Assembly: GCF_947568905.1 (NCBI RefSeq)
Contig: NC_079172.1
Coordinates: 43,586,001-43,650,000 of the forward strand
Source of the DNA: Ostrea edulis
Taxonomy: Eukaryota
Reading direction: 5' to 3'
Length of the DNA: 64,000 bases
A model generated the notes under the pieces. That model ran no database searches, was not told the origin of the DNA, and saw nothing but the letters and a program-made list of their open reading frames with translations. A program made the translations under genes and the position numbers. Below, one piece after another: positions 1-29,644 of this stretch; position 1 is the stretch's first letter; every line of letters starts with the position of its first letter.

Positions 1-560
1 CTGTTCATATATAAACAAGACGACCTTAAACTGTTCATAAACAAGATGACCTTAAACTCCTGTAAATCAATGATAACCTCACACAAGATGCTGCTCAAAT
101 AAATGCCTGATGTACATAAAAATATCACACATTATTTTTTAAGGAGAAAGTATTACATACTGTGTATGTCCCACAAATCAATTTTTATTCTCACTGTTTC
201 ACTGCAGACCAAAACTATGTAATTCAAAACTACAGTGAATAAAATCTATTCATATTTAGATATACTGTATACTTTAATTAACAATAGAAGTTAATTAAAC
301 TGTGGATTTATATTGGTGTGGAAGTGGATTTAGATTTTAAAAAAAACAAAACATGAAATTAACCTGTCTGGAATCAACAGCTTTACAATTCATATAAAAC
401 CTTTCGAATCTTCTGAAAATGTGTAGTGCTTTATAAACTGTAAAGAAATGGTTTTAATTAGGTGTTTGAGATATTTTCAAGAAGTTTTTCATCCCAAAAT
501 TATTTTATGCATATAGATGCACGGAATCTATGTTAAGTACAAAATGTTGAGAACTTCAAA

Positions 561-791
561 TGAATTTTGTAGATAGTTGATAAATTGAAATGAATTTTGT
601 AGATAGTTGATAAATTGAAATGAATTTTGTAGATAGGTGATAAATTGAAATGAATTTTGTAGATAGGTGATAAATTGAAATGAATTTTGTAGATAGGTGA
701 TAAATTGAAATGAATTTTGTAGATAGGTGATAAATTGAAATGAATTTTGTAGATAGGTGATAAATTGAAATGAATTTTGTAGATAGGTGAT
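561..791 (+). repeat. 30-bp minisatellite (about 8 copies) spanning the exon A acceptor
   Basis: Unit TGAATTTTGTAGATAG(G/T)TGATAAATTGAAA; AG dinucleotides at 572, 602 and so on to 782. Confidence 0.95.
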
Positions 792-884
792 ATAGATGGA
801 GAGGAGAGTTTGAATCTGACAACTACAACACTTAAGAGGTGCAAACAGCAGGTGCTTCGTCCATACTGGCGACTTCTTATGTTT
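783..884 (+). CDS. GRL exon A (IGDIDGEESLNLTTTTLKRCKQQVLRPYWRLLMF)
   Basis: ttttgtAG acceptor at 781-782; GTAAGT donor at 885; phase 0 into the next exon. An alternative acceptor at 794-795 is possible. Confidence 0.75.
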
Positions 885-3800
885 GTAAGTGTTATAAATC
901 AATATAAATTAATCCTCTCATGCTGGGAATTCTTGTGTTAGTGAGTATTATAAAGAGATTATACAATGCTCCTCTCATGCTGGGAATTCTCATGTTAGTA
1001 TTATAAAGAGATTACACAATGCTCCTCACATGCTGGGAATTCTTATGTTAGTATTATAAAGAGATTATACAATGCTCCTCTCATGCTGGAAATTATCATG
1101 TTAGTATTATAAAGAGATTACACAATGCTCCTCTCATGCTGGGAATTCTATGTTAGTATCATATAGAGATACAATACTGATCCTCTCATGCTGGGAATTC
1201 TCATGTTAGTATCATATAGAGATTACACAATGCTCCTCTCATGCTGGGAATTCTATGTTAGTATCATATAGAGATTACACAATGCTCCTCTCATGCTGGG
1301 AATTCTGTGTTAGTATTATAAAGAGATTATACAATGCTCCTCTCATGCTGGGAATTCTCATGTTAGTAAGTATTATAGATTACAGAATACTCCTCTTATG
1401 CTGGATGTCATTTTACATGAATATAAAGGAATTTTTTTTCTCGAAAAATTCTTACTCAGATCAGCATGGCCATGTTAGTCATATTGATTTTGAGGCATCC
1501 TCACATTGTGTGGATTCAAGTTCAATTAAGTCACATCACCATGCAGTACGTAGGGGTCATGATATGAAATCAAAAATTTGTCGTTGGGCTAAAGAGAGTA
1601 GAGATCTTAAAACAATCGGAAGCAAGTTGACTTGGTGGACATTGTTACTAAATGATGCATAATGCTCCTGCAATGCTGGAAACACCCAATGCTTATAAGT
1701 ATTATATAGAATACACAATCCTTTGGCCATGTTGAAGACTTTTCATGTTTGAAAGTATTACTTAATATACAATATGCCCTGGCCATGCATGTGATTTTGC
1801 ATGTTTGTGAGTATTAGGCATTATACATTAGTGGAAAGTATCAATATTGTATGTCTATGTGAAAGAACAATATGATAAAGCTCTAGGCAGTATTGGTTAA
1901 ATGTCTTATGTCTCAACTATATACTATATGTGTGTGAGCATGCAAGTGAGTGTATGTGTGTGAACATGTGTGTGTGTGTGTGTGTGTGTGTGAACGTGCA
2001 TGTGTGTACAGTGTGTGTGTGTATGTGTGTGTGCAGAGATAAACTTGCATGTATACTGCTGGTGGATATTTTAGTTTTTACATTGACAAGTAGTCCTGAA
2101 ATTCGTTTCTTGGTGACCATGATATTTTATTCCGTCCCAGACACAAACAGATGGATGGACAGAAAGACGGACGGACAAACACTGGACAAAGTGATCCCCA
2201 TGTGTCTGCCATATGCTTTGCAGGTGATGCAGAATCACAGCAGTAAATTCCATGCCATCTCCATTAATGATTACATATTTGACTTTTGTAGATTGGATGG
2301 CGGGGGTTCGGCAGGGAGTCTGTTCACTTTACCAGTAAAAGATTGACTGTGTTGAACGTCGTGTACCCTATATTTGTTGTCTGCTTGTTACTGTATACCT
2401 ATGTTTATGAGATTGTTGCGTGTCAATGGAAACTGGATCTTCACAAGGATACTCAGGTAAGACGTCATGTCTCGGACGTCACTCAGGTGAAACAGATGTC
2501 ATGTCTCGGATATCTAGATGTTTTATCCCACTTACTGGTAGATGCAGTTACAATGTATTGGTAGAAAGCACAAAAATCTTGTAATGTGATTTTTTTTCAT
2601 TTAAATGACAGATGTTAATTAAATTAAATTAAATATTGATTAACCTTAATCTGATCTGACTGATTAACCATTATCATATTCTGGTTTTCCTTAATTCTCT
2701 TCTGTCGGAGGAAGATCTGGAGGCCTATTAATTGTACTAAAGCCAGTCTGTCTTTTGGTTAACAACTTTAACTTTGGCCATTATCTTTTGAACCATAAAT
2801 ATAAAGATGAAGACTTCATGTATGATCCATGGTTAGGTCTAATAAAAAGCTTGTTTGAGATTGCCTTTGATGTCAAAGGGTGTAGCCTTTATTTCGTTTT
2901 CAGCAATAACTTGATAGAGTGTGTTTATATTTGCACCATGGCTGGAGCAATGAAAACTTTGTCTCAGATATTGTATTTGATATCAAAGGGTGGCATTTGT
3001 TACTAAAGATAAATATTTAGTTTCTTAGCAATACTTTAAAAAGGGTTTGAACATAATTGATTGGTGTAATGAAAATCTTGTCTGAGATTGCCTTTGGGAT
3101 CATGGGTCCTAGGGTGTGGCCTCTGTTGCTAAAAATAAATGTTTAAGATTTCTGCATTAGAACCAGGCTATAATGGTCCCTTTATGGGAATTTTGTTCAA
3201 ATTTTGTAGGATTGTTAGTCACCAAATGTAGTTGATCACATTCCACCGCCATTTTGATTTGTCAAATTTTACAGGAGTTATGGGACTTTGTTGAATTTGT
3301 ACATTCGACTACACTATAGGATTAACACTTTGTGGACACAATCCCTCAGTGACCACTATACAGATTTTGTTCAAGTTATGCAGGATTGTTATTCACAATA
3401 TGTAGTTGGACATATTCCACCGCAATTTTGATTCTACGAATTTTACAGTAGTTATTGGACTTTTGTGCAACTTTTTTTGTGTTGGTGGGGGACATATGGC
3501 TACACGTACACATAGCAGTCTTGTTACTTTTGCTTTGTAGCTTCCTCTCTGTTAGTTGTATAGTGTGACTTATTTGTCTTTTTACTTTAATCTGTTAATC
3601 AGAAATACATAGATGCAAATCCTGCACATGTGTAATGAATAATGTATTACAGTGTATCTCATGCTAAGATGAGCTTAATATGCAGTACTAGTGGAATGAT
3701 CTATCGGTGCATCGTGATACTCATCTTCAGTTGGCTATGTATGGATAAATACACATGTCTGTTAAATGATGATACCTGTCATAGCGTTTTCCAAAAGTAT

Positions 3801-4164: not shown

Positions 4165-7100
4165 TAAAAATTTAACCTTGCTAATAACTTTTGAACAGTA
4201 AGTGCTAGAGCTTTGATATTTCATATGAGTATTCCTACAGTGACAAGACCTTTCTGTGGGTACTAAACCTTTTGACCTTGGCATTTGACCTACTTTTAAA
4301 AAATTTGACATTGGTCATAACTTCTAAATGGTAAATATTAGAGCTCTCATATTGCACATAAGCATTTCATGTGACAAGATCTTTCTACTGCTACCAAGAT
4401 ATTTGTCCTTGTGACCTTTATGGAGCGCCAAATTACATAAACTCAAATAATTGAAGATGTCTTCAATTATTTGAAGATATCATCAATTCATTTGATGCGC
4501 GCAACAATTTAATTAAAGATCCCTTCAAATAATTAATGATATCTTCAATTCTGAATTATTGCACGCATTAATTGAATTGATGATAGCATTAATTCTGCAG
4601 CTGAATTGATGCGGCTTTAATTGAATTGATGATCTCTTCAAATGAATTAATGATATCAACAATTGAATTGATGCGCGCTACAATTCAATTGAAGAGAGCA
4701 ATAATTGATATAATGCACGCATTAAATCAATTGATGAGAGCAATAATTGAATTGATGCGCGCATTAATTCATTTGATGAGAGCAATAATTGATTTAATGC
4801 ACGCATTAATTCAATTATTGCTCTCTTTAATTGAATTAATATCTTTAATTCATTTGAAGAGAGCAATAATTCTTTTAGAGAGAGCAACTATATAATTAAA
4901 GATATTTTCAATTCAACATATCCACAATTGAATTAATGATCTCTTTAATTGAATTGTTGCTCTCTTTAAAAGAATTGATGCGCGCATTAATTCCTTATAC
5001 AAAAGCATTGTAAATAATTAAAAATATCTTCAATTAAATTAAAGAGATCATCAAATTATTTATACCGAGCTCTAAATTAATTATTGCGAGCAATATTTCT
5101 ACGAAATTGATGCTCTCATCAATTGAATTGAAGAGAGCAATAATTGAATTAATGTGTGCATCAAATCTATTATTGCTCTCATTAATTCAATTGATGCTCT
5201 CATCAATTGAATTGAAGAGAGCAATAATTGAATTAATGTGCACAGTAAATCAATTATTGCTCTCATTAATTCAATTGATGCGTGCATTAATTCAATTGAT
5301 GAAAGCAATAATTGAATTGAAGTGTGCATTAATTCATTTGATGAGAGCAATAAATGATTTAATGCGTGCATTAATTCAATTGAAGAGAGCAATAATTGAA
5401 TTGAAGATATCTTCAATTATTTGAGTTTATGTTAATTTGGTGCTCCATAGACCTTGGCCATCTTTGAAATTGGTCATTATCGGGGGCATTTGTGTTTTAC
5501 AAACGCATCTTGTTTTTATTGATGTGCAAAGTATCGCGATATGTATCGTATCGTGTGTCAAGTATTGTGATACGTATTGGATCGGCTAGAAAGGGTATCA
5601 TCCCACTCCTACTTGGCAGGGTGTATTTTTCTGATTAGTACAGCCCACGGCTGCGTTTTAGATCATAGCAACTAGCCTAGCTGCTAGGCTAGATATCTAG
5701 GTCTATTGAAGGCAATGTATGAATTAACGCTTGTTATCCCTACATAGGGCTAGCCTAGATGTTTGTTTAATTTCATACCACTATCTAGCACTATGTAGGT
5801 AATATGATCTTGAACGCACTGGTCTGAATCCTGATAATTTTGTTATTTCTTGTAGGTCATCACTACAACTACCACCACTCCTGAGTCCACAGAAGCAAAT
5901 ATTAGTACCACAATGACGGGAGGTCAGAGTGTGGCCACACTGACCTTAGGCTCACCCCAGAATCTCACCAGCATGCACTGGATCGCCCCGTCTGAGCGTC
6001 CCGAGGCCTGTAAGCACATCATCACTACGTACGTCATTCCCAACACTCTCCACTTTGTGGCATACATTATGGGGATGGTTCACTTCAGACTACAAGAGAA
6101 TGAACAACTGTATGCCATCATGGAAAAGGCAGGTTTTTGTAGATCTCTTCCCTATTCTCTAGTTTAGACAAATTGTTGTATGATTATAAGGCAGGTTTTA
6201 GTAGATCTCTTCCCTATTCTCTAGTTTAGACAAATTGTTGTATGATTATAAGGAAGGTTTTTGTAAATCTCTTTCCTATTCTCTTAAGTTTAGACAAATT
6301 GTTGTATGATTATAAGGTAGGTTTTTGTAGATCTCTTCCCTATTTTCTAATTTAGACAAATTGTTGTATGATTATAAGGCAGGTTTTTGTAAATCTCTTT
6401 CCTATTCTCTTAAGTTTAGACAAATTGTTGTATGATTATAAGGCAGGTTTTTGTAAATCTCTTTCCTATTCTCTTAAGTTTAGACAAATTGCTGTATGAT
6501 TTTATTATATGTGTACAGAAGGATAGCAGTTTTGTCACATATTATTTCAGTACCAAAGTGATTTCAGCCCCTATTTGTATCATCCTGTGCCATTTCATCA
6601 CTGTAGATTATATAGTTCTTTTTAATCCTAGTTTAAAATTCGCCTCATGATGTTTGGAGCAATTTGATTGTGTGCTAAATGCATCGATGTGAAAACATCC
6701 TCTGTGTACAAGACTGAAAAAGCAAGTGCAATGAATATTTTATCAGATACAGTTTGTGTTGTACTCCAGCTGATGTGTAGCTAATAAGGTATGGGACAGC
6801 TGGAATATAGAATTGATGCTTGGTACTGGTAATATGAGCATTTTGATACCATATAGGTTTCTGGGTACTGATTTGGACCAATTTTGATGAATGGTTCCAA
6901 ATTGCTGAAATTTATATCTATATAGAAGATATTACGGGAGGATCATCAAACTAAGGAGGATTATCATACCTTCATCTCTTCAATTCATCAAACTTTGTAT
7001 CCACCACAAACGTCTGCCATACAGTATTCGAGCTCATAGTTTTGATGTTAAAACTGACATTTAAATTTTACTGTAGGTTTTCCTACAAGCCACACCATCA

Positions 7101-10100
7101 TATAGCAGAACAGCATCCCAGCAAAAGATGATCAAGAAGCTTAGGTGTGTATTTGTGTTATCAGGTAGTAATGAAAACACAGACCAGTGCGAAGTCGAAA
7201 GTGAGGTTTGTTTTCTCTTTTTGACATCTCAGTTTGACCTATGGGTTGGTAGTGTTAATATTCTATTTTAGAAACTAAAAAAATAAGAAAAATTTAAGGA
7301 GGGACATTGAATTAGCAGATCAATTTTATTTTATTTAGTTTATGATACAGCATAAACAAAATGTGGAGTCAATTTGCATTGCATAAAAATCTGAAATATG
7401 TTTTGAAATTTGAAATGACAGATTTAATTTTCTGTAAATAAATTAAATAGCATAAAAAATTTTGATGAAGAGTTGGTGCATTTTATCAACCTGGTCAAAA
7501 ATGGAAAAGAAATAAACCTTTGCTGAATGATTTAATCAGCTTTTGGACATTCAATCAAGTTTTCAATCACTTGATAATGGGTAGAAATTAAGTGATTTCT
7601 TTTTTATTTAAAGGATACTGATGGCCGTGGGTGCAATCTGGGTGGCTGTCACGTTAGTGATGCAGGGACTGTATGAGTTTGCCTTTGACTTCCCCAAACT
7701 GCTCTTCTTTAAAAAAGTAGGGTAAGAGATTTTATATTTATATAAAAAAGACTTTTGGGAAACTCCATATTGTGTCCATGAAATTTTTTAATTTCTGTTT
7801 TATATTATGAATATCCATTAGGTGTTATTTCTGTTTAACAGTATGACTGTTCATTAGGTGTTATTTATATTTTACAATATGATTATTCATTAGATGTTAT
7901 TTCTGTTTTATAGTATGACTGTTCATTGGGTGCTATTTCTGGGGTTTTCTGTTTAACATTATGAATATTCATTAGGTATTATTTCTGTTTTATAGTATGA
8001 CTGTTCAGGGCTGTCACTGTCCTTTTTGGTACAGGGTCCCATTAGATTGGGAAAATTATCGACGTTTTGGGTCAAATTGGGAAATTTTACTTTCATACAA
8101 TGATTTTAAAAGACAGACAAAAACAATATCTAGTAAGTTCAATTAGGTTTTATTTTTCAATTGATCACCTGGCTGCCAATCTATAAAGAGACTAGAGGTC
8201 TCTTGCGCAACTTTTCGGGCCTTGTCGAAAATGCGCAAGAAGTTATAAGTGAAAACGAAACTAACATGATTTAATTTTTTTTTTATACACACAATGAAAC
8301 AGTTTATGATATTGGGAATTTCTAGGCAAATAAATTGGGAATTTTGGGATTTTTTCCCAATTGGGAAGGGTCCGTTTATCGGACCCAATTCAAAGTGATT
8401 GAAGGCCCTGCTGTTTATTGGGTGCTATTTCTGTTTTACATTATGAATATTCATTAGGTGTTATTTCTGTTTTATAGTATGACTGTTCATTGGGTGTTAT
8501 TTCTGTTTTATAGTATGACTGTTCATTGGGTGCTATTTCTGTTTTATAGTATGACTGCTCATTGGGTGCTATTTCTGTTTTATAGTATGACTGCTCATTG
8601 GGTGTTATTTCTGTTTTATAGTATGACTGTTCATTGGGTGCTATTTCTGTTTTATAGTATGACTGTTCATTGGGTGCTATTTCTGTTTTATAGTATGACT
8701 GTTCATTGGGTGCTATTCAGTATTGAACTACTGGGAATCCTTATCCTGAACTCGGTGACATTGGCAGTGATAGCAAATTATGTTACACACTGTGAGATGG
8801 CCCTGTTCTACCTGAAGGGTCTGGCTCTCAGATTGCAGGAGAAGTCCTCAGAACTCAAGGCAGCAATGAAGGTCAGTTAAAAAAATCACACACTAAGTGC
8901 ACACTATTGCATTTGAAATATTTCATGGACTTTAGAAATAAATTTCAAAGCACAAACTAGTGTGATTTATATTGAATTAGTTCATATTTTTAAGTATCTG
9001 AAATGTATATCAATTTCAAGGAATATGTCAAGGAAAAATATTTATTTGATGAAGTCCTTTAATGTTCATGTGGGAGACTTTTAACTTATATGGAGATGTA
9101 AGTGAAATCTTTTGATAGAATATGTAATTTCACTCATGATACGATTCACTGAACACAAACTTTGTGAATGATCTTGTCTTGGTTGTAGGACCTTCTGTTC
9201 ATCAAACAGAACGTGAGTTTACTGAATGGACCAGTGGCGAGAATGACTGCTCTCATATCCGTCATATTTGCTGAACTCACTATCATTGGTATGCTTAATT
9301 TTAAAGGGACTGGTTCACGATTTTTGATAAAAATATTTTTCCTTTTTTATCGTAAACATTAAAAATATAACTAATTTAATGCTGACAGCCAAAATTTTGA
9401 CCTTCTGAATGCAAGAATAATAGCAATATTTTAGCCTTAAATCTGTGTTATGTAAACAAAGACTCGAGTCTATTTATGTATACAAACAAACAAGTGATTT
9501 CAGAAATATTGATTTTGTAATATAAAACATCTTAATTTTGCATAATCTCAAATTTGAACTTCTAAATGACACATTTTGTCCCAAAAATGCTTGAAATGTG
9601 AAGATATAATAAACTTAGATCGATATCCGTTTCTTTTAAAAATTTCGTAAAAAATAGCATACCCCAATCTTTGTTTACAAAACAAATAATAAACTCTCTA
9701 AAATGAGCTTCTGTGATAATGTATACCCTTAATTTTTATGTGAACTCTTTTAAACACATTAGACAGAAGATTTTGATCATTAAAAGTGAAAAAGAAAATT
9801 TTAGGGAAAATCGTGAATTAGTCCCTTTAAGATTTATTTCTAGAGTTGGTTGAAAAATACTGTATCCTTGCAGCAAATCATAGGAATATAGAAGCATTTA
9901 TCAATAAAATTGCAAAGGAAAACCAAACTTCGAAGAATAGATATTATCATTTTAAATGTTGATGGTGGTATGTAACAAACTTAATTTGTTTAAAGCAAAA
10001 TTATAATGTTTTATGTAGTTTGCCAGGAAAAGATCAAAAATTTTACACCTTCAAGATTTATAAACTGGTATCGTTTTTGGTCTGTCTGTTTGGATAATTC

Positions 10101-12281
10101 AACAATGGCCATAGCTACAATGTATATACAAGGCAGAAAGCTTGGTATTTGGTGAACAGAATGGTATATGATGTATCAGTAGGTCAAGGTCAAATTTTAT
10201 CTACAATTTAACTCTTAATGCAATCAGAGTCGTAGTGTTTCATGAACATGATTTGTTCTGATTGTTGGAGAATACAAGAGACTTGCCATTACATTTATAT
10301 ACAATATATTACAAATACAAGAGACTTGCAATTACATGTATATACAATATATTACAGGTATTGTTATTCTGGTACTGAACAAAAATGATTCCTTAAAAGT
10401 GTGGATATACAGGAGTTTCTTCCCTTTAGTTTGGCTCTTCATTCTTGTTGCTCCATTGTACCAGGTAAATCTTATATCATTTCATTATATTGGTCTTCTG
10501 TACATTTAATGAAACTCGAAGAAAGGTTGAATACATTGATAAAGTACAGTAAAACCCTGTTATCTCGAACTCGATGTGACTGAGAAAAAACTTTGAGATA
10601 TCTAAGGATTCGAGATGTCAAGGTTAAATTACTTAAAGAATAAGTTCTTTGGGACTTCGGAATCACTTCGACATATTTAAGGTATTCGAAATATTGGTGT
10701 TCGAGATATTTAAGTTCAACTGTATTTGAATTACGTTGCAGGCAGCTCGAGTGAACTCGGTGTCAATAAGAATGAAGAAAATAGCCCTAGAGATGAAGGT
10801 CTTTGGGTACAAGAATTCCTCACAGCTAGAACTGGATTCCTTCATCTTGTTTGTCAGTGAGGCTAGGATGAAGGTAATACAAGTCTTATTCTTCTAGAAT
10901 TCCTCAAAAGCTCTCTCAGCAAAACTGATACAAGTTTGTGAGCATGTTCATCTGAGTACAAAACTTGTATTCAGTTGCTCTTATTTATCCCGTCATTTAG
11001 TTTCTTGACTCCATGTTTACAGTAACAATAAAATGGCAAACATTACAAATGTATACAGTGAAACCTGTCTAATCCGACATACACTGGAAGACATTAAGTA
11101 CAGTGAAACCTGTCAAATCCGATATACACTGATAGACATTAAGTACAGTGAAACCTGTCTAATCCGACATACACTGGAAGACATTAAGTACAGTGAAACC
11201 TGTCTAATCTGACATACACTGGGATACATTAAGTACAGTGAAACCTGTCAAATCCGATATACACTGATAGACATTAAGTACAGTGAAACCTGTCTAATCC
11301 AACATACACTGATAGACATTATAGGGACTCATTCACGATTTTCCTCCAACTTTTGTTTTTCACTTTAAATGTTCAAAATCTACTGTCCAATATGTTTAGA
11401 AGGTTTCACAAAAAAATCAGGTTATTCATCATGACAGAAGCTCATGATAGAGAGTTTGTTATTTGTTTTGAAAACAAAGATTGAGGTGTGTTATTGTTTA
11501 CAGGGTTTTCAAAATATATGGATATTGATCCAAGTTTAGTATATATATCACGTCTCAAGTATACTTTAGGTAAAATGTGTCATTTAAAAGTTAAAATTTG
11601 TGATTGTACAAAATGAAGATGCTTTAAATTACAAAATTAATGTTTCACTGGTTTGTTTGTTTACATAAAAAGACTCGAGACTTTGTTTACATAAAACAGA
11701 ATCAAAGCTAAAATATTGCTCTTATCCTTGCAATCAGACGGTCCAAATTTTGGTTGTCATCATTAAATAAGCTATATTTTTAATTTGTAACATCAAAAAT
11801 GAAAACATTTTTTTCGAAAAACATGAACCAGTCCCTTTAAGTACAGTGAAACCTGTCTAATCCGACATACACTGGGAGACATTAAGTACAGTGAAACCTT
11901 TCTAATCCGACATACACTGGGATACATTAAGTACAGTGAAACCTGTCTTATTCAACATACACTGAGAGATAAATTTTAGTCAGAATACAGAGTGTGTCAG
12001 AATAAACAGTGTAAACAACAATGAAATGAAATTTAGATTGACAATAAAGGGTCAGAATCCCCAGTGAAACAGATTGCATAGGTGTCAGATTAGGCAGTCT
12101 TCATTGCATTAGATTGCACTTTCTTGTTATCTAATGAAAACTTGATCTTCTATTTCAGGCTAAGCTTTTCCACATTCCCATTCTGCCTCGGTATCTGATA
12201 GCAGTGTTTGTCCTAGGCTCCTTCATTCTTCTGGTCCTGTTCCAAACCAGCGTCATAGGTCCTGTCAACTACTGGTTCTAG
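783..12281 (+). CDS. Gustatory-receptor-like 7TM ion channel (GRL/7TMIC) gene, 5'-partial; join(783-884,2292-2456,5856-6128,7077-7144,7614-7721,8694-8871,9189-9288,10358-10464,10742-10873,12159-12281)
   Basis: Ten phase-compatible exons (1356 nt, 451 aa plus stop) joined by GT-AG introns and one GC-AG intron. Seven hydrophobic segments. The C-terminus ELDSFILFVSEARMK|AKLFHIPILPRYLIAVFVLGSFILLVLFQT resembles the GR/GRL TM7 region (TY-hhhh-QF-like). Family assignment is from recalled motifs, not a search. Confidence 0.82.
913..1410 (+). repeat. About 52-57-bp minisatellite (about 10 copies), intronic
   Basis: Unit TCCTCTCATGCTGGGAATTCTCATGTTAGTATTATAAAGAGATTACACAATGC. Confidence 0.9.
1925..2035. 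repeat. Interrupted (GT)n microsatellite
   Basis: Seen directly. Confidence 0.9.
2098..2228 (+). mobile_element. 3' end of Pearl/CvA-like (Helentron-type non-autonomous) element
   Basis: ACRG-type microsatellite (acagatggatggacagaaagacggacggac) followed by a gtgatccccatgtgtc...gcaggtga terminal segment. Confidence 0.55.
2292..2456 (+). CDS. GRL exon B (IGWRGFGRES...LHKDTQ; TM1)
   Basis: ttttgtAG acceptor, GTAAGA donor, 55 codons with a hydrophobic helix. Confidence 0.85.
4099..5514 (+). mobile_element. Helentron-type non-autonomous element (HINE/Pearl-like), interrupted by an IS3EU-like insertion
   Basis: Subterminal IR ATGCCCCCGA/TCGGGGGCAT, 3' hairpin tgtgttttacaaacgca, T-rich flanks. 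Confidence 0.7.
4419..5449. mobile_element. Non-autonomous foldback DNA transposon, IS3EU-like
   Basis: About 40-bp TIR TATGGAGCGCCAAATT.../...AATTTGGTGCTCCATA; 6-bp TSD GACCTT (4413-4418, 5450-5455). TAY...RTA termini with a 6-bp TSD fit IS3EU. Confidence 0.7.
5856..6128 (+). CDS. GRL exon C (Thr-rich extracellular loop, TM2, ...LYAIMEK)
   Basis: ttcttgtAG acceptor, 91 codons. Ends at AAG|GCAGGT, a GC donor required by the phase of the next exon. Confidence 0.8.
6126..6501 (+). repeat. 62-64-bp minisatellite (6 copies) beginning at the exon C donor
   Basis: Unit AAGGCAGGTTTTTGTAGATCTCTTCCCTATTCTCTAGTTTAGACAAATTGTTGTATGATTAT at 6126, 6188, 6250, 6314, 6376 and 6440. Confidence 0.95.
7077..7144 (+). 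CDS. GRL exon D (VFLQATPSYSRTASQQKMIKKLR)
   Basis: ctgtAG acceptor; GTGTGT donor in phase 2, matching the next exon. Confidence 0.75.
7614..7721 (+). CDS. GRL exon E (TM3, ILMAVGAIWVAVTLVMQGLY...)
   Basis: Poly-T acceptor, GTAAGA donor, phase 2/2. Confidence 0.85.
7795..8720 (+). repeat. 36-bp minisatellite built from the exon F acceptor; degenerate 5' part and homogeneous 3' part split by an insertion
   Basis: Unit TTCTGTTTTATAGTATGACTGTTCATTGGGTGCTAT. Confidence 0.95.
8006..8410. mobile_element. Small TIR element (CAGGGC...GCCCTG) inserted in the 36-bp array
   Basis: Short TIR; CTGTT duplicated at 8001-8005 and 8411-8415. Superfamily uncertain (hAT-like ends, atypical TSD length). Confidence 0.55.
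8694..8871 (+). CDS. GRL exon F (TM4, MTVHWVLFSIELLGILILNS...AAMK); 5' boundary ambiguous in 36-nt steps
   Basis: Last of seven identical ttctgttttatAG acceptors; GTCAGT donor at 8872. Confidence 0.8.
9189..9288 (+). CDS. GRL exon G (DLLFIKQNVSLLNGPVARMTALISVIFAELTII)
   Basis: ttgtAG acceptor, GTATGC donor, phase 0/1. Confidence 0.85.
9305..9826 (+). mobile_element. Kolobok-like non-autonomous element
   Basis: TTAA TSD on both sides; TIR AGGGACTGGTTCACGATTTT/AAAATCGTGAATTAGTCCCT. Confidence 0.75.
10358..10464 (+). CDS. GRL exon H (end of TM5, TM6, ...VAPLYQ)
   Basis: ttacAG acceptor, GTAAAT donor, phase 1/0. Confidence 0.85.
10547..10722. mobile_element. Tc1/mariner (Tigger-like) MITE
   Basis: TA|CAGT...ACTG|TA termini; internal ctcgaac/gttcgag IR. 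Confidence 0.65.
10742..10873 (+). CDS. GRL exon I (AARVNSVSIRMKK...ELDSFILFVSEARMK)
   Basis: ttgcAG acceptor, GTAATA donor, 44 codons, phase 0/0. Confidence 0.85.
11052..11970 (+). repeat. 45-bp tandem array derived from a MITE left end, interrupted by a Kolobok-like element
   Basis: Unit TACAGTGAAACCTGTCTAATCCGACATACACTG(G/A)...GACATTAAG. Confidence 0.85.
11323..11836 (-). mobile_element. Kolobok-like non-autonomous element, inverted relative of 9305-9826
   Basis: AGGGACT...AGTCCCT termini, TTAT/TTAA flanks; interior is reverse-complement similar to 9305-9826. Confidence 0.7.
12159..12281 (+). CDS. GRL terminal exon J (TM7, AKLFHIPILPRY...VLFQTSVIGPVNYWF*)
   Basis: tatttcAG acceptor; TAG stop at 12279-12281. 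Confidence 0.85.
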   Translation, partial: AKLFHIPILPRYLIAVFVLGSFILLVLFQTSVIGPVNYWF

Positions 12282-14230
12282 TCAATGACAAGAAACTCAC
12301 ACAAGTACAGGCCCTGTCAACCACTAGTTCTAGTCAATGACAAAGAAACTCACACAAATACTCGAGGATAGTCAATGACAAAAATCTCGCACAAATACTC
12401 GAGGATCAGCTGTGATCCAGTGAGGCTTAGTTTTATTGGTCCGCTACCAAGAAAGACGAAGGCAATAACTAGTTTCTGCTCCGTCTGTACGTGCCACTGT
12501 CCTTCTTTCAAAACTTTATTCTCTAGACTTTTTCCCTCATCATGCTTTGATGAAGGGAGCTGGAATTTTGTTTATGATATGATAATATATGTTTACAGAT
12601 AAAGTTTTAAGTTTTGTCACAGTTGACTGATCGATTTTGAGATTTTTGTAGTGAAGGTAGTTTCGTAGACTTTTTTTTCTATTCTGCTTTAATTTAGGAA
12701 ACTGAAATTTGATATGTGGTTTTCTTATAAGGAGATACAGATTACACCTTATTTTCATTGTTGACTCATTCTAACAAAAATTGTAAGACATAGTTTTATG
12801 GTTGAGTGAACGTCTTTAAGTCTTGTAGTCTGTCTAGTTCTCTGTACCTTTTTTTGTGAAATCCATGTAAGTTACTGAAATAAAATTCATCTTCATTCTT
12901 TTTTATAATTAAACAGTGGACTGTTGGCATAAGATCATTCAGACAGATTATTCATGTAAAATATCACGTGAACAATTAAACCTGTGGGGGACATATATTG
13001 CTTGCTATACTTACAGATTTTGCTTGTTTAAATTCAGTTACTATGATAAATGTCTTAGTGTTGATTGTAAATGATTTAAGACTGATTACTCCAAAACAAT
13101 TGGTGTCAAGTTTTTGATGATGTTCAGTTTTCTTCTTTTTTATATTTGAATGACAAAATAACTCTAATAGAAGCCTGGGGGTGGGTGGGTGGGTGGGTGG
13201 GGGCAAAATCACTCTAATAGAAGCCTGGGGGGTGGGGGTAAAATCACTCTAATAGAAGCCCGGGGGATGGGGGTGGGGGATTTTTACCATTAGATAACAA
13301 TGATATGTACTACCAAACACTCCATGTATTACTGTGTTCATGTTACAATGATGTCACAATAATTGCTAATGTCATTTTAATAATAAACTGTTTGTTTTTG
13401 TGTATGCATTTCACTTAATATCTTGTCACACTAAAATATTGATGAACTCTGACCTCATATTTTGAAGCACATATTGGTGTACATGAACATTCTCTATGTG
13501 TAGGTAATATCTACTTATGTAAGTTACACAGCTCGGTGTAATAATTAAATTACCTGGTATCTTTGTTTCGATTGGTATGTTTGACAATACACAAGGAGAT
13601 TGGAATTTGATATTTATAATGTATGGTGTTTGCTGTATGACAATCTGCACAATGAGATTGGGAATTTGATATTATGTATGGTTTGATTGGTATGTTTGAC
13701 AATACACAAGGAGATTTGGAATTTGATATTATGTATGGTTTGATTGCTGTTTGTGTGATTGCTATATGGTTTTTTTTATGTATGCTTCACTTTATACACA
13801 TCCAAAATAGAATGTCATTTATGGTTGTTTCAAGGGAGGAAACTCCTGTACTGTATACACAGTGTAGGATTCTGCTGAGAGTTGTACATTATTGTGTTAT
13901 TACTGTGTATTTGTAGTCAACTTCAATTTATAATTATACACATGCACTTATAGATCAATATACATCAAAGACTGTTCTGTGATAAATAATTGTTAAAAAT
14001 CAGCCATTACTTTGTTGAATATTGGATTTATATTTATGCAATGATAATCTATATTATACATGTTGTAAGTAACTTTACAATATGATTGCTATATATTATG
14101 TTGTGGCTTGTCTCTGTTACATTTGTAGCTGAGATACCAATACAATTTGTTGAAATGTTAATAAAATAATTGTGAATTTCAGAAGTGTGTTTGTTCCAAA
14201 TTGTCATAGTAGATTTATAGAATGCCAAAA

Positions 14231-27824: not shown

Positions 27825-28160
27825 AAAATGCAAAGGGCCCCTGAATCTCTAGTCAGGTGCTCTACCAACTGAGCTATCTGGCCACCGGAGAGCGAACCCG
27901 GCTGACCGCTTCACTCCTCCCTCCTTAAATGTCTTAACATCCCATGATATTTATCCCCAGGGGCTGGTCTACGGCACCAAATGTAATATAGAAGAAAGGA
28001 GAAAATCTGTGGCTGAACCGGGAATCGAACCCTGCATTACTCGTCAGGCGCTCTAACCACTGACCTACCCAGGCCAATATTCACAGTCCGTATAGCCCTA
28101 ATTACGACATTCCTCCCTCCTTAATTTGTCTTCGCCCTCGAAGACACACAACCCAGATTC
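27825..28160 (-). mobile_element. Tandem tRNA-derived SINE-like units (about 190-bp period)
   Basis: Minus strand ggccagatagctcagttggtagagcacctgactagag (A-box-like) and ggttcgattcccggttcagcc (B-box-like); no complete cloverleaf. Confidence 0.6.
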
Positions 28161-29644
28161 TTTCTCTTTTTTTGGTGCCCCTGACAGGAGTTTCATCTGC
28201 AAATCTCATGTGAACCTGGAACAGATTTATGCATCAGGTCAAATTACGTCGTTCAAATCTTACTTACAGTAATCTTTTGTCTATTCCTATTCCAGTAACT
28301 AATAGAATGCTTTCTTTGGTTTGTTAAATGGGACATGAAGGTCGCAAACATTGCAGAAAAATGCGTAACGCGCGTTATTGATCAGTATTATCTCCCAGAG
28401 TTGTAGCAATAAAGACCTACAATACTGACACAAACAACAATACATGGGGGGTTGTGATTTAAATGTTCTACTCATAAAAGAAAACAAAAATGTGTCAAAA
28501 ACTAATAAGTGCTGCTATAATACCGTAAATCTCAGTCGGTCTTTAAATTCAGGTTTCGGTTTCGATGTATTTGTTAGTATGGTCAGCGAAAAAGGTAACA
28601 AATACATGAACAATGAATTAAAAAAAAATGAAGAGGTAAAATACTCAACAGATTCAAATGCAAAACGAACTGTCACGGTTGCAAAAGAAGCGGTGATCAA
28701 TGCAAACATTCGGAGCGCGCACTTTTTGTACTAAAAATGAAATATAATAAATTTAAAAAACAACAACAATCGACTCGAACAATTTCAATCGTTTCTAACA
28801 TGTTTAAAGTAGTGCGCTGATCCTTCATAGCAAGCGGTAATACTGAGATGTGGTTGCCATCTTTTTAGCGGGAGGAGGGTTGTCAATCCCTTGGTAAGAA
28901 CAACCCAGCTCTCTTAAAATGACCATATGAACATTATGGACCAATGCTCCTTAGGGGTAAGGTTGGAGAGTTCAAATACCTTCACGACACATCCTGCATC
29001 TCTACCAGATTAAATGTTGTATAAAAACGTTAAAGATTGATTGGGTTCGGGATTGGTCATTTTGGTGTCGAACATTTTTGTTGTAAAATTGTGATTTACT
29101 ATTTCAATGACGGGAAAAAATAAAGTTTATAAACTTTTGTATTTAATATTTGTTTTAGAAACATTAAAGCAAAATTACATTACAATGTATTTCTGCCCAT
29201 ACAAAAATTATTTCTATACAATGCTATACATTCATAAATTGAGTTTTAATTTTATCAATGACTATGGTTAAAGTTACATACAAAACTATCATAATAGCAC
29301 ATTTCTACAACAAAATAAAATTGTCTGATTTAGAGTGAATATTACAGGAACTTGTGCCATTCATTTTCAAACTGAAAGAGAAAATGTAGCACTTCATATT
29401 TTTCTTTCAAGTAATCAGGGTTTATAGTTTTTACTTTCTCTTTATCAAACGCTTCTTTCTAATCATTTTCATCAATTATCATTTCCTTACTTTACAATGA
29501 GGGGTAGGCGACTTTGCTCTCAGTTTATCTATTTCTTCTTTTGGTAACATATCTAAAGTTTATTCTAAAAGCAAGGTAAATGGTTTGTACGTATGCAATG
29601 TGCAAGTTTTAAATGTATATGCTCCTCACGAAAATGTTAACAGC

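What the first reader, a model, noticed from the sequence alone, without database searches (positions are those of the whole stretch)
8458..8871. Seven in-frame splice acceptors in a 36-bp array: a possible length dial on a receptor helix
Seen: the repeat unit is the polypyrimidine tract, the AG and the first 23 nt of exon F. Identical AGs end at 8477, 8513, 8549, 8585, 8621, 8657 and 8693. The unit is 12 codons with no stop, so each more upstream acceptor adds one MT(V/A)HWVLFLFYS in front of TM4, up to 72 extra hydrophobic aa. Degenerate copies fill much of the rest of the intron. Inference: acceptor choice and VNTR allele length could both change the protein. An even or odd number of extra membrane passes would preserve or flip downstream topology. 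I know of no description of this in a GRL.
Basis: partly seen in the sequence, partly recalled or inferred. Interest (0 to 1): 0.8.

Follow-up and report, generated by a model that had tools for sequence, protein, structure and literature searches.

The report
Splice-site minisatellite in oyster receptor intron
A 36-base repeat in a flat-oyster receptor gene really does copy one splice acceptor seven times in frame, but all transcript evidence uses only the last copy, so it is an ordinary, tolerated "mirage" minisatellite and not a protein-length dial.

Summary
A 36-bp array (8411-8717, 8.5 copies, 94% alike) repeats 13 nt of intron with its AG plus the first 23 nt of exon F. Seven identical acceptors end at 8477-8693, and the frame stays open from each.

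The gene is Ostrea edulis LOC125659305, a conserved gustatory-receptor-like (7TMIC) protein. My spliced model matches RefSeq isoform X2 100% over 451 aa.
- All three RefSeq isoforms, and one spliced RNA contig in each of two runs, join exon E to 8694, the last AG.
- No RNA contig covers the inner array.
- The array is absent from the orthologous intron of other oysters.
- The loop it would lengthen is exactly 18 aa in 32 of 51 aligned orthologues, including every mollusc.

This kind of repeat is already described: amphioxus "mirages" and the human F7, IFI6 and CBS boundary minisatellites. The same gene carries four or five more boundary arrays, and earlier notes of this scan report the same kind in other genes of this genome. 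The boundary bias fits random duplications in once-short introns.

Contigs cannot exclude rare use of the nearest pseudo-acceptors. Raw junction counts remain the decisive test.

The parts
7614..7721 (+). Exon E (end of helix S3 and the short link ...FPKLLFFKKV-G). The donor GT is at 7722-7723 and the intron is phase 2.
   Evidence: tblastn to orthologues. The spliced model is 100% identical to RefSeq XP_056005293.1. RNA contig depth lies over this exon.
7722..7790 (+). The only non-repetitive part of intron E-F (69 nt of 972).
   Evidence: The DNA contig of run X3 ends at 7790, where the array begins.
7791..8007 (+). Old, degenerate part of the 36-bp array. It holds six units, 3-7 differences from consensus. 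Four have an in-frame TAG (CATTAG) and a fifth reaches TAA just past the unit. AGs end at 7841, 7913 and 7995.
   Evidence: TRF period 36/72; unit table.
8008..8407 (.). MITE-like insertion inside one array unit. It has short CAGGGC terminal inverted repeats and a CTGTT duplication at the flanks. It is high-copy in the genome.
   Evidence: Depth is 60-90x single copy in DNA runs X3 and X4, and diverged copies occur in the RNA runs.
8411..8693 (+). Young part of the array. It holds a partial unit, unit 8442 (in-frame TAG) and six units 8478-8693 with 0-2 differences. Each unit has a yUnAy branch-like TTCAT, a pyrimidine tract and TTTTATAG. Pseudo-acceptors end at 8477, 8513, 8549, 8585, 8621 and 8657. 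The authentic acceptor ends at 8693.
   Evidence: The branch-point assignment is inferred from sequence only.
8694..8871 (+). Exon F (start of helix S4/TM4, MTVHWVLFSIELLGIL...). Its first 23-24 nt are the exonic part of the repeat unit.
   Evidence: RNA contigs of X1 and X2 start here (8693-8869). The exon is 78-93% aa identical in relatives, with VHWVLF invariant. M311 is the first residue of H311-358.

Best explanation
This is a 'mirage'-type intronic minisatellite. A 36-bp segment spanning the 3' splice site of intron E-F of Ostrea edulis LOC125659305 (13 nt of intron plus 23 nt of exon) was tandemly duplicated and then amplified by slippage or unequal exchange. It reached about 14 units. 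The oldest units decayed and took a MITE insertion, while the six nearest the exon are young or homogenised. Every unit is a complete 3' splice-site module, but the spliceosome uses the exon-proximal (last) AG, so the whole array stays intronic and the protein is unchanged. The authentic acceptor must now take its branch point from the exon-derived part of the preceding unit. Choice of the last AG is most likely due to exon definition: the true exon body and its donor at 8872 lie next to the last module only. The in-frame, stop-free period is a coincidence, and the array is a tolerated by-product of a repeat-prone genome with once-short introns. Shown: the anatomy, the canonical junction in assembled RNA and in RefSeq models, lineage specificity, and the constraint on loop length. 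Inferred: the mutational origin, the branch point and the reason for last-AG choice.
For: Array anatomy. One spliced contig in each of RNA runs X1 and X2 (1066 and 1899 nt, k-mer depth 13.5 and 11.7) has pieces 8693-8869 / 10739-10871 / 12157-12274, and depth is zero in bin 8497-8667. The spliced model is 100% identical to RefSeq isoform X2. Isoforms X1-X3 differ only at the N-terminus. Orthologous contigs L001-L009 have E-F introns of about 310-450 nt without the unit, and L001 and L007 have no tandem arrays at all. VHWVLF is invariant at the exon start. The link length is fixed at 18 aa in 32 of 51 aligned orthologues, including all molluscs. The same gene has boundary arrays at 558-792, 913-1404, 6126-6501, 10271-10356 and 12257-12361 that are out of frame or carry stops. 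Orthologues in Sinanodonta and Liolophura carry boundary arrays too. The counts fit random duplication if ancestral introns were 150-300 nt (pooled P 0.82 and 0.10), as they are in crassostreine oysters. Literature: amphioxus mirages do not disturb splicing (PMC3087553, PMC3902484), and the F7 IVS7 pseudo-sites are silent (PMC1557585).
Against: RNA evidence is from assembled contigs only, which drop rare isoforms. At k-mer depth about 12, a roughly 10-20% isoform could be missed (my own estimate, not given by the tool). The RNA runs carry a different organism label (A) from the DNA runs (B), although divergence is only about 1% and one SNP is shared with a B sample. All seven 3' splice-site modules are identical over -20..+23, so there is no sequence reason for strict silence. 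In two of the five human donor-side precedents (IFI6 6-16 and CBS), the nearest pseudo-sites are used. With present-day intron lengths the boundary bias is significant (P = 0.027, 1e-5 and 0.024), so a mutational or selective bias toward boundaries is not excluded.
Confidence: 0.8

Rival explanations
1. Leaky pseudo-acceptors: the one or two exon-proximal pseudo-sites (AGs ending 8657 and 8621) are used at a low level. This would give minor isoforms with 12 or 24 extra residues at the extracellular start of S4. These would be splicing noise or, less likely, functional variants whose range depends on VNTR allele length.
For: All modules are identical in sequence and in frame, so such mRNAs would escape NMD. 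In the human IFI6 6-16 and CBS minisatellites the two nearest pseudo-donors are used constitutively (PMC1557585). RefSeq models of the chiton orthologue include two isoforms that differ by 5 aa (LLGFS) at exactly this junction, from acceptors 15 nt apart.
Against: No RNA contig in two runs covers 8497-8667, and no RefSeq isoform carries an insert. The link length is invariant at 18 aa in all molluscs aligned. No protein among 1.84 billion representatives holds the repeat peptide.
Confidence: 0.15
2. Splicing-regulatory decoys: the reiterated branch/pyrimidine/AG modules bind U2AF and U2 and tune splicing efficiency or retention of intron E-F, without changing the protein.
For: There are seven full 3' splice-site modules within 250 nt of the real one. 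Several other boundaries of the same gene carry reiterated splice signals.
Against: There is no expression or retention data. The array is absent in other oysters whose orthologue is otherwise conserved. Boundary arrays occur in unrelated genes of this genome according to earlier scan notes, which fits a mutational by-product.
Confidence: 0.04
3. Assembly artefact: the array length or its existence is an error of the assembly.
For: Short-read contigs cannot span it.
Against: Contigs of two samples (X3 and X4, the latter with its own SNPs) end exactly at 7790 and 8688-8692, and array-bin depth is about 4x single copy in both. The decayed units and the MITE insertion are not what a collapse or expansion error produces.
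Confidence: 0.01

Closest known systems
Amphioxus 'mirages' (Adh3, troponin C, globins BflGb6/BflGb9, PGBD5)
   Same: Both are minisatellite-like tandem duplications of an intron/exon boundary. BflGb6 repeats the 3' end of an intron plus the 5' part of the next exon, exactly this arrangement. Units carry AG/GT signals yet regular splicing is kept. Units of 10-160 bp show concerted evolution (PMC3087553, PMC3902484).
   Different: This case is in a mollusc, not a cephalochordate. Here the unit is a multiple of three and stop-free in the six young copies. Length polymorphism is not shown here.
Human F7 IVS7 37-bp VNTR (also LAMIN B2 and PDGF intron minisatellites)
   Same: The terminal monomer spans the exon boundary, so the authentic splice site is reiterated by strictly identical pseudo-sites that stay silent. 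Only the exon-proximal site is used (PMC1557585).
   Different: Those arrays are on the donor side, while this one is on the acceptor side. The 5'-to-3' scanning mechanism shown for F7 donors cannot be transferred as such.
Human IFI6 (6-16) and CBS IVS13 minisatellites
   Same: A boundary minisatellite supplies multiple splice sites, and the nearest pseudo-sites are really used, changing the mRNA.
   Different: Those are on the donor side and use is documented. Here no use of pseudo-sites was seen.
Tandem alternative acceptors a few nt apart (NAGNAG-type and wider)
   Same: These are in-frame alternative 3' splice sites that add residues at a loop. The chiton orthologue has such a pair 15 nt apart at this very junction.
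   Different: They are not generated by a minisatellite, and they have two sites rather than seven.

Membership tests
Mirage / boundary-spanning minisatellite | Head-to-tail array of 10-160-bp units | tested here: met
   36-bp unit, 8.5 plus about 6 copies.
Mirage / boundary-spanning minisatellite | Unit contains intron and exon sequence, including the splice signal, and the terminal unit is the authentic boundary | tested here: met
   The unit is 13 nt of intron with AG plus 23 nt of exon F. The last unit runs into the exon with 0 differences in 24 nt.
Mirage / boundary-spanning minisatellite | Regular splicing is retained and pseudo-sites are silent | tested here: met
   The RNA contig in each of two runs and three RefSeq isoforms use 8694. 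Rare isoforms are not excluded.
Mirage / boundary-spanning minisatellite | Length instability or polymorphism between haplotypes | tested here: inconclusive
   The ratio of array depth to single-copy depth is 4.0 in both X3 and X4. Short-read contigs cannot size the array.
7TMIC / gustatory-receptor-like (GRL) proteins | Fold of insect GR/OR: S0-S7, long S4-S6, split S7 | tested here: met
   AlphaFold pTM is 0.73 for the oyster protein and 0.70 for the chiton one. The Foldseek PDB top 23-24 hits are all GR/OR/Orco, prob 1.0, target-normalised TM up to 0.71. Atlas feature hits go to GR, OR, 7tm_7 and DUF3537 clusters.
7TMIC / gustatory-receptor-like (GRL) proteins | Sequence match to Pfam 7tm_7 or Trehalose_recp | tested here: not met
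   No Pfam hit for the exon pieces or for ten full-length orthologues. Membership rests on fold only.
7TMIC / gustatory-receptor-like (GRL) proteins | Ligand-gated tetrameric cation channel | not testable with these tools
   No functional data.
Functional alternative-acceptor array ('length dial') | Junction evidence for upstream AGs | tested here: not met
   Zero RNA contig depth over 8497-8667. No isoform or database protein holds the repeat peptide.
Functional alternative-acceptor array ('length dial') | Conservation of the array or of insert tolerance in relatives | tested here: not met
   The array is absent in other oysters. The link is fixed at 18 aa in molluscs.

The most novel reading that the evidence does not exclude
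In some tissue, stage or VNTR allele of Ostrea edulis, the exon-proximal pseudo-acceptors are used. This would produce GR-like channel subunits whose extracellular S3-S4 link and S4 mouth are extended in 12-residue steps, so that an intronic minisatellite sets the range of receptor isoforms. It would be an acceptor-side counterpart of the IFI6 6-16 minisatellite, in a conserved metazoan 7TMIC.
Probability: 0.05. Interest if true: 0.65.

Novelty: new member of a known kind. Interest (0 to 1): 0.3.

Why it matters
As found, it matters little. It adds an acceptor-side, in-frame example to a known class of repeats and shows that the annotated protein is unaffected. Three things have some value. 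(1) "Mirages", described in the papers found here only for amphioxus plus a few human genes, also occur in molluscs: several in this oyster gene and in its unionid-mussel and chiton orthologues. (2) A natural array of seven identical 3' splice-site modules, of which apparently only the last is chosen, is a ready-made substrate for studying acceptor selection, the mirror of the F7 donor model. (3) The gene is a well-conserved, apparently single-copy metazoan GR-like protein that Pfam does not recognise.

Tried and rejected
- Pfam scans of single exons and of ten full-length orthologues gave nothing.
- The word search with the 138-aa open frame found only four ORF fragments of relatives and no protein with the repeat.
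- The exact look-up of chiton isoform X2 failed because only the longest product is on record. Isoform X1 worked.
- No run on record as RNA holds the stretch. Only two small runs guessed to be RNA were available, and only as contigs, so junctions could not be counted.
- I considered that the boundary bias proves a splice-site-directed mutational mechanism. I rejected this as unproven, because the excess disappears if ancestral introns were 150-300 nt.
- I considered that the open frame signals selection. I rejected this because the period and frame are within chance, and the sister arrays in the gene are out of frame or stopped.
- One paper search failed on a syntax slip and was resent.
- A search for mollusc literature on such repeats found none.

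Full report
**Observation.**
- TRF reports a 36-bp array at 8411-8717 (8.5 copies, 94% matches) and a degenerate 36/72-bp array at 7791-8007.
- The consensus unit matches seven times at up to 3 mismatches, against none in 100 shuffles.
- Chopping the intron into units shows six decayed units (7806-8007), one unit split by an insertion, unit 8442, and six nearly identical units at 8478-8693. The exon's own copy follows.
- TTTTATAG ends at 8477, 8513, 8549, 8585, 8621, 8657 and 8693.
- Exon E ends at 7721 in phase 2. Reading from each of these AGs is open and adds MT(V/A)HWVLFLFYS per unit.
- The unit is 13 nt of intron plus the first 23 nt of exon F.
The older units mostly carry an in-frame TAG. 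A ~400-bp MITE-like element at 8008-8407 sits inside one unit; it has 60-90x single-copy depth in DNA runs.
- Only 69 nt of the 972-nt intron are non-repetitive.

**What the gene is.** Exon pieces give no Pfam hit.
- A profile of exon F from the window and three relatives (A1) found 130 proteins.
- A word search with the chiton orthologue then found 82 full-length relatives across molluscs, annelids, brachiopods, nemerteans, amphioxus, hemichordates, chelicerates, corals and a rotifer.
- My ten-exon model is 783-884, 2292-2456, 5856-6128, 7077-7144, 7614-7721, 8694-8871, 9189-9288, 10358-10464, 10742-10873 and 12159-12281.
- It translates 100% identically over 451 aa to Ostrea edulis LOC125659305 isoform X2, XP_056005293.1.
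- AlphaFold models of the oyster protein (pTM 0.73) and the chiton orthologue (pTM 0.70) hit only insect gustatory and olfactory receptors and Orco at the top of the PDB search. Probability is 1.0 and target-normalised TM reaches 0.71.
- Language-model features point the same way. The GR-like (7TMIC) assignment therefore holds by fold, although Pfam 7tm_7 does not match.
- Counting helices back from the C-terminus, H311-358 is S4. G310|M311 is the E/F junction, so exon F does start at the first residue of TM4.

**Are the upstream acceptors used?** No evidence says so.
- Only two small runs guessed to be RNA held the exons. Each contains one spliced contig (1066 nt and 1899 nt, k-mer depth 13.5 and 11.7).
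- Their pieces lie at 8693-8869, 10739-10871 and 12157-12274, so exon F begins at 8694. The extra base is the G shared with the end of exon E.
- Neither run has any contig over the inner array: bin 8497-8667 has depth 0.
- The RNA differs from the window at about 1% and shares one SNP (8742) with a DNA sample of the window's organism label. It is therefore conspecific or nearly so.
- Independently, all three RefSeq isoforms differ only at the N-terminus and read KKVG|MTVHWVLFSIELL.
- The isoforms of the C. virginica, Saccostrea and M. gigas orthologues also differ only at the N-terminus or by a few single-residue substitutions.
- None of the proteins retrieved holds the repeat peptide.
- Contigs drop rare variants, so use at perhaps 10-20% or less is not excluded. 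That bound is my own estimate.

**Comparative evidence.**
- ORF fragments found by the word search led to contigs L001-L009 carrying the orthologue in other bivalves. L001-L007 are closest to Magallana/Crassostrea.
- Their exons are about 80% identical in DNA and 78-93% in protein, with VHWVLF invariant at the exon start. The exon start is therefore ancestral and the array derived.
- Their E-F introns are about 310-450 nt and lack the unit. L001 and L007 have no tandem array at all.
- Across 51 orthologues, the segment between the FAFDFP and IELLG anchors is exactly 18 residues in 32 orthologues, including every mollusc. It is 12-27 residues overall. Inserts of 12-72 residues are far outside that range.
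- The one hint of tolerance is the chiton. Its RefSeq isoforms X1 and X2 differ by five residues (LLGFS) at exactly this junction, from two AGs 15 nt apart.

**Context: this is one of many.** The same gene has other arrays on its boundaries:

| Coordinates | Unit | Position |
|---|---|---|
| 558-792 | 30 bp | TTTTGTAG plus the first 10 nt of exon A; in-frame TGA |
| 913-1404 | 53 bp | starts 29 nt downstream of the exon A donor; unit resembles the exon A end plus donor |
| 6126-6501 | 62 bp | end of exon D plus its AAG\|GCAGGT donor |
| 10271-10356 | 43 bp x2 | abuts the exon H acceptor |
| 12257-12361 | 52 bp x2 | across the stop codon |

- The Sinanodonta orthologue has four donor-side arrays, one of 109 copies. 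The chiton orthologue has three.
- With present intron lengths, boundary-spanning arrays are in excess (P = 0.027, 1e-5 and 0.024).
- If ancestral introns were 150-300 nt, as in crassostreine oysters, the excess vanishes (pooled P = 0.82 and 0.10).
- Two earlier notes of this scan report the same kind of arrays in other genes of this genome and reach the same reading.

**Comparison with the known.**
- Tandem repeats spanning intron/exon boundaries are described as "mirages" in amphioxus Adh3, troponin C, globins and PGBD5. BflGb6 is an acceptor-side case, and regular splicing is kept (PMC3087553, PMC3902484).
- In human F7, LAMIN B2 and PDGF the reiterated donors are silent. In IFI6 6-16 and CBS the two nearest pseudo-donors are used (PMC1557585).
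- The present array is thus a new, acceptor-side, in-frame member of a known kind, in a mollusc.

**Mechanism.**
- Shown: the array is intronic in the mature mRNA that was assembled and annotated.
- Inferred: it arose by tandem duplication of a boundary-spanning 36-bp segment and grew by slippage or unequal exchange.
- Inferred: the authentic acceptor now depends on a branch point in the exon-derived part of the preceding unit. TTCAT lies 24 nt upstream of the AG and UGAC 31 nt upstream.
- Inferred: the last module wins because only it adjoins the true exon body and its donor (exon definition).

**Verdict.** The finding is of low to moderate interest.

Noticed in passing
window 558-792: A 30-bp array (7.8 copies, 99% alike) whose unit is TTTTGTAG plus the first 10 nt of exon A (which starts at 783). 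It gives eight identical acceptors, but the frame hits TGA in each unit.
   Followed up: partly
window 6126-6501: A 62-bp array (6 copies) starting with the last codon of exon D plus its donor. The 100% match to RefSeq requires the exon to end at 6128, so the intron begins GCAGGT. This is a GC-AG intron whose GC donor is reiterated six times. Crassostreine orthologues have a normal GT donor there.
   Followed up: partly
window 913-1404, 10271-10356, 12257-12361: Three further arrays sit on or next to functional boundaries of the same gene. A 53-bp unit resembles the exon A end plus donor. A 43-bp x2 array ends 1 nt before the exon H acceptor. A 52-bp x2 array duplicates the last 25 nt of the CDS, the stop codon and the start of the 3' UTR.
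   Followed up: partly
L011:27860-27895 (Liolophura sinensis LOC135479555): RefSeq isoforms X1 and X2 of the chiton orthologue differ by five residues (LLGFS) inserted exactly at the homologous E/F junction. They come from two AGs 15 nt apart.
   Followed up: yes
L010:16252-21667; L011:23499-24248 and 28005-28243: Orthologues in a unionid mussel and a chiton carry their own boundary-spanning arrays. One is 50 bp x 109 copies on the exon A donor. Another is 118 bp x 6.4 containing 100 nt of exon B plus its donor. A third is 81 bp x 3 on the exon F donor.
   Followed up: partly
window 8008-8407: A MITE-like element is inserted inside one unit of the 36-bp array. It has CAGGGC termini and a CTGTT flank duplication. 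Depth is 60-90x single copy, and there is no second copy in the window.
   Followed up: partly
window 9300-9860 and 11330-11810: Two stretches of an extremely abundant repeat, with summed contig depth up to about 10^6 against about 70 for single copy. Contigs join the two stretches on opposite strands, so they are probably inverted copies of one element flanking exons H and I.
   Followed up: no
protein P0146 and 50 orthologues (alignment A3): The gene family is an apparently single-copy, strongly conserved metazoan GR-like protein (about 60% identity across molluscs, about 45% to amphioxus). It has no Pfam match. The S3-S4 link is exactly 18 residues in every mollusc aligned.
   Followed up: partly
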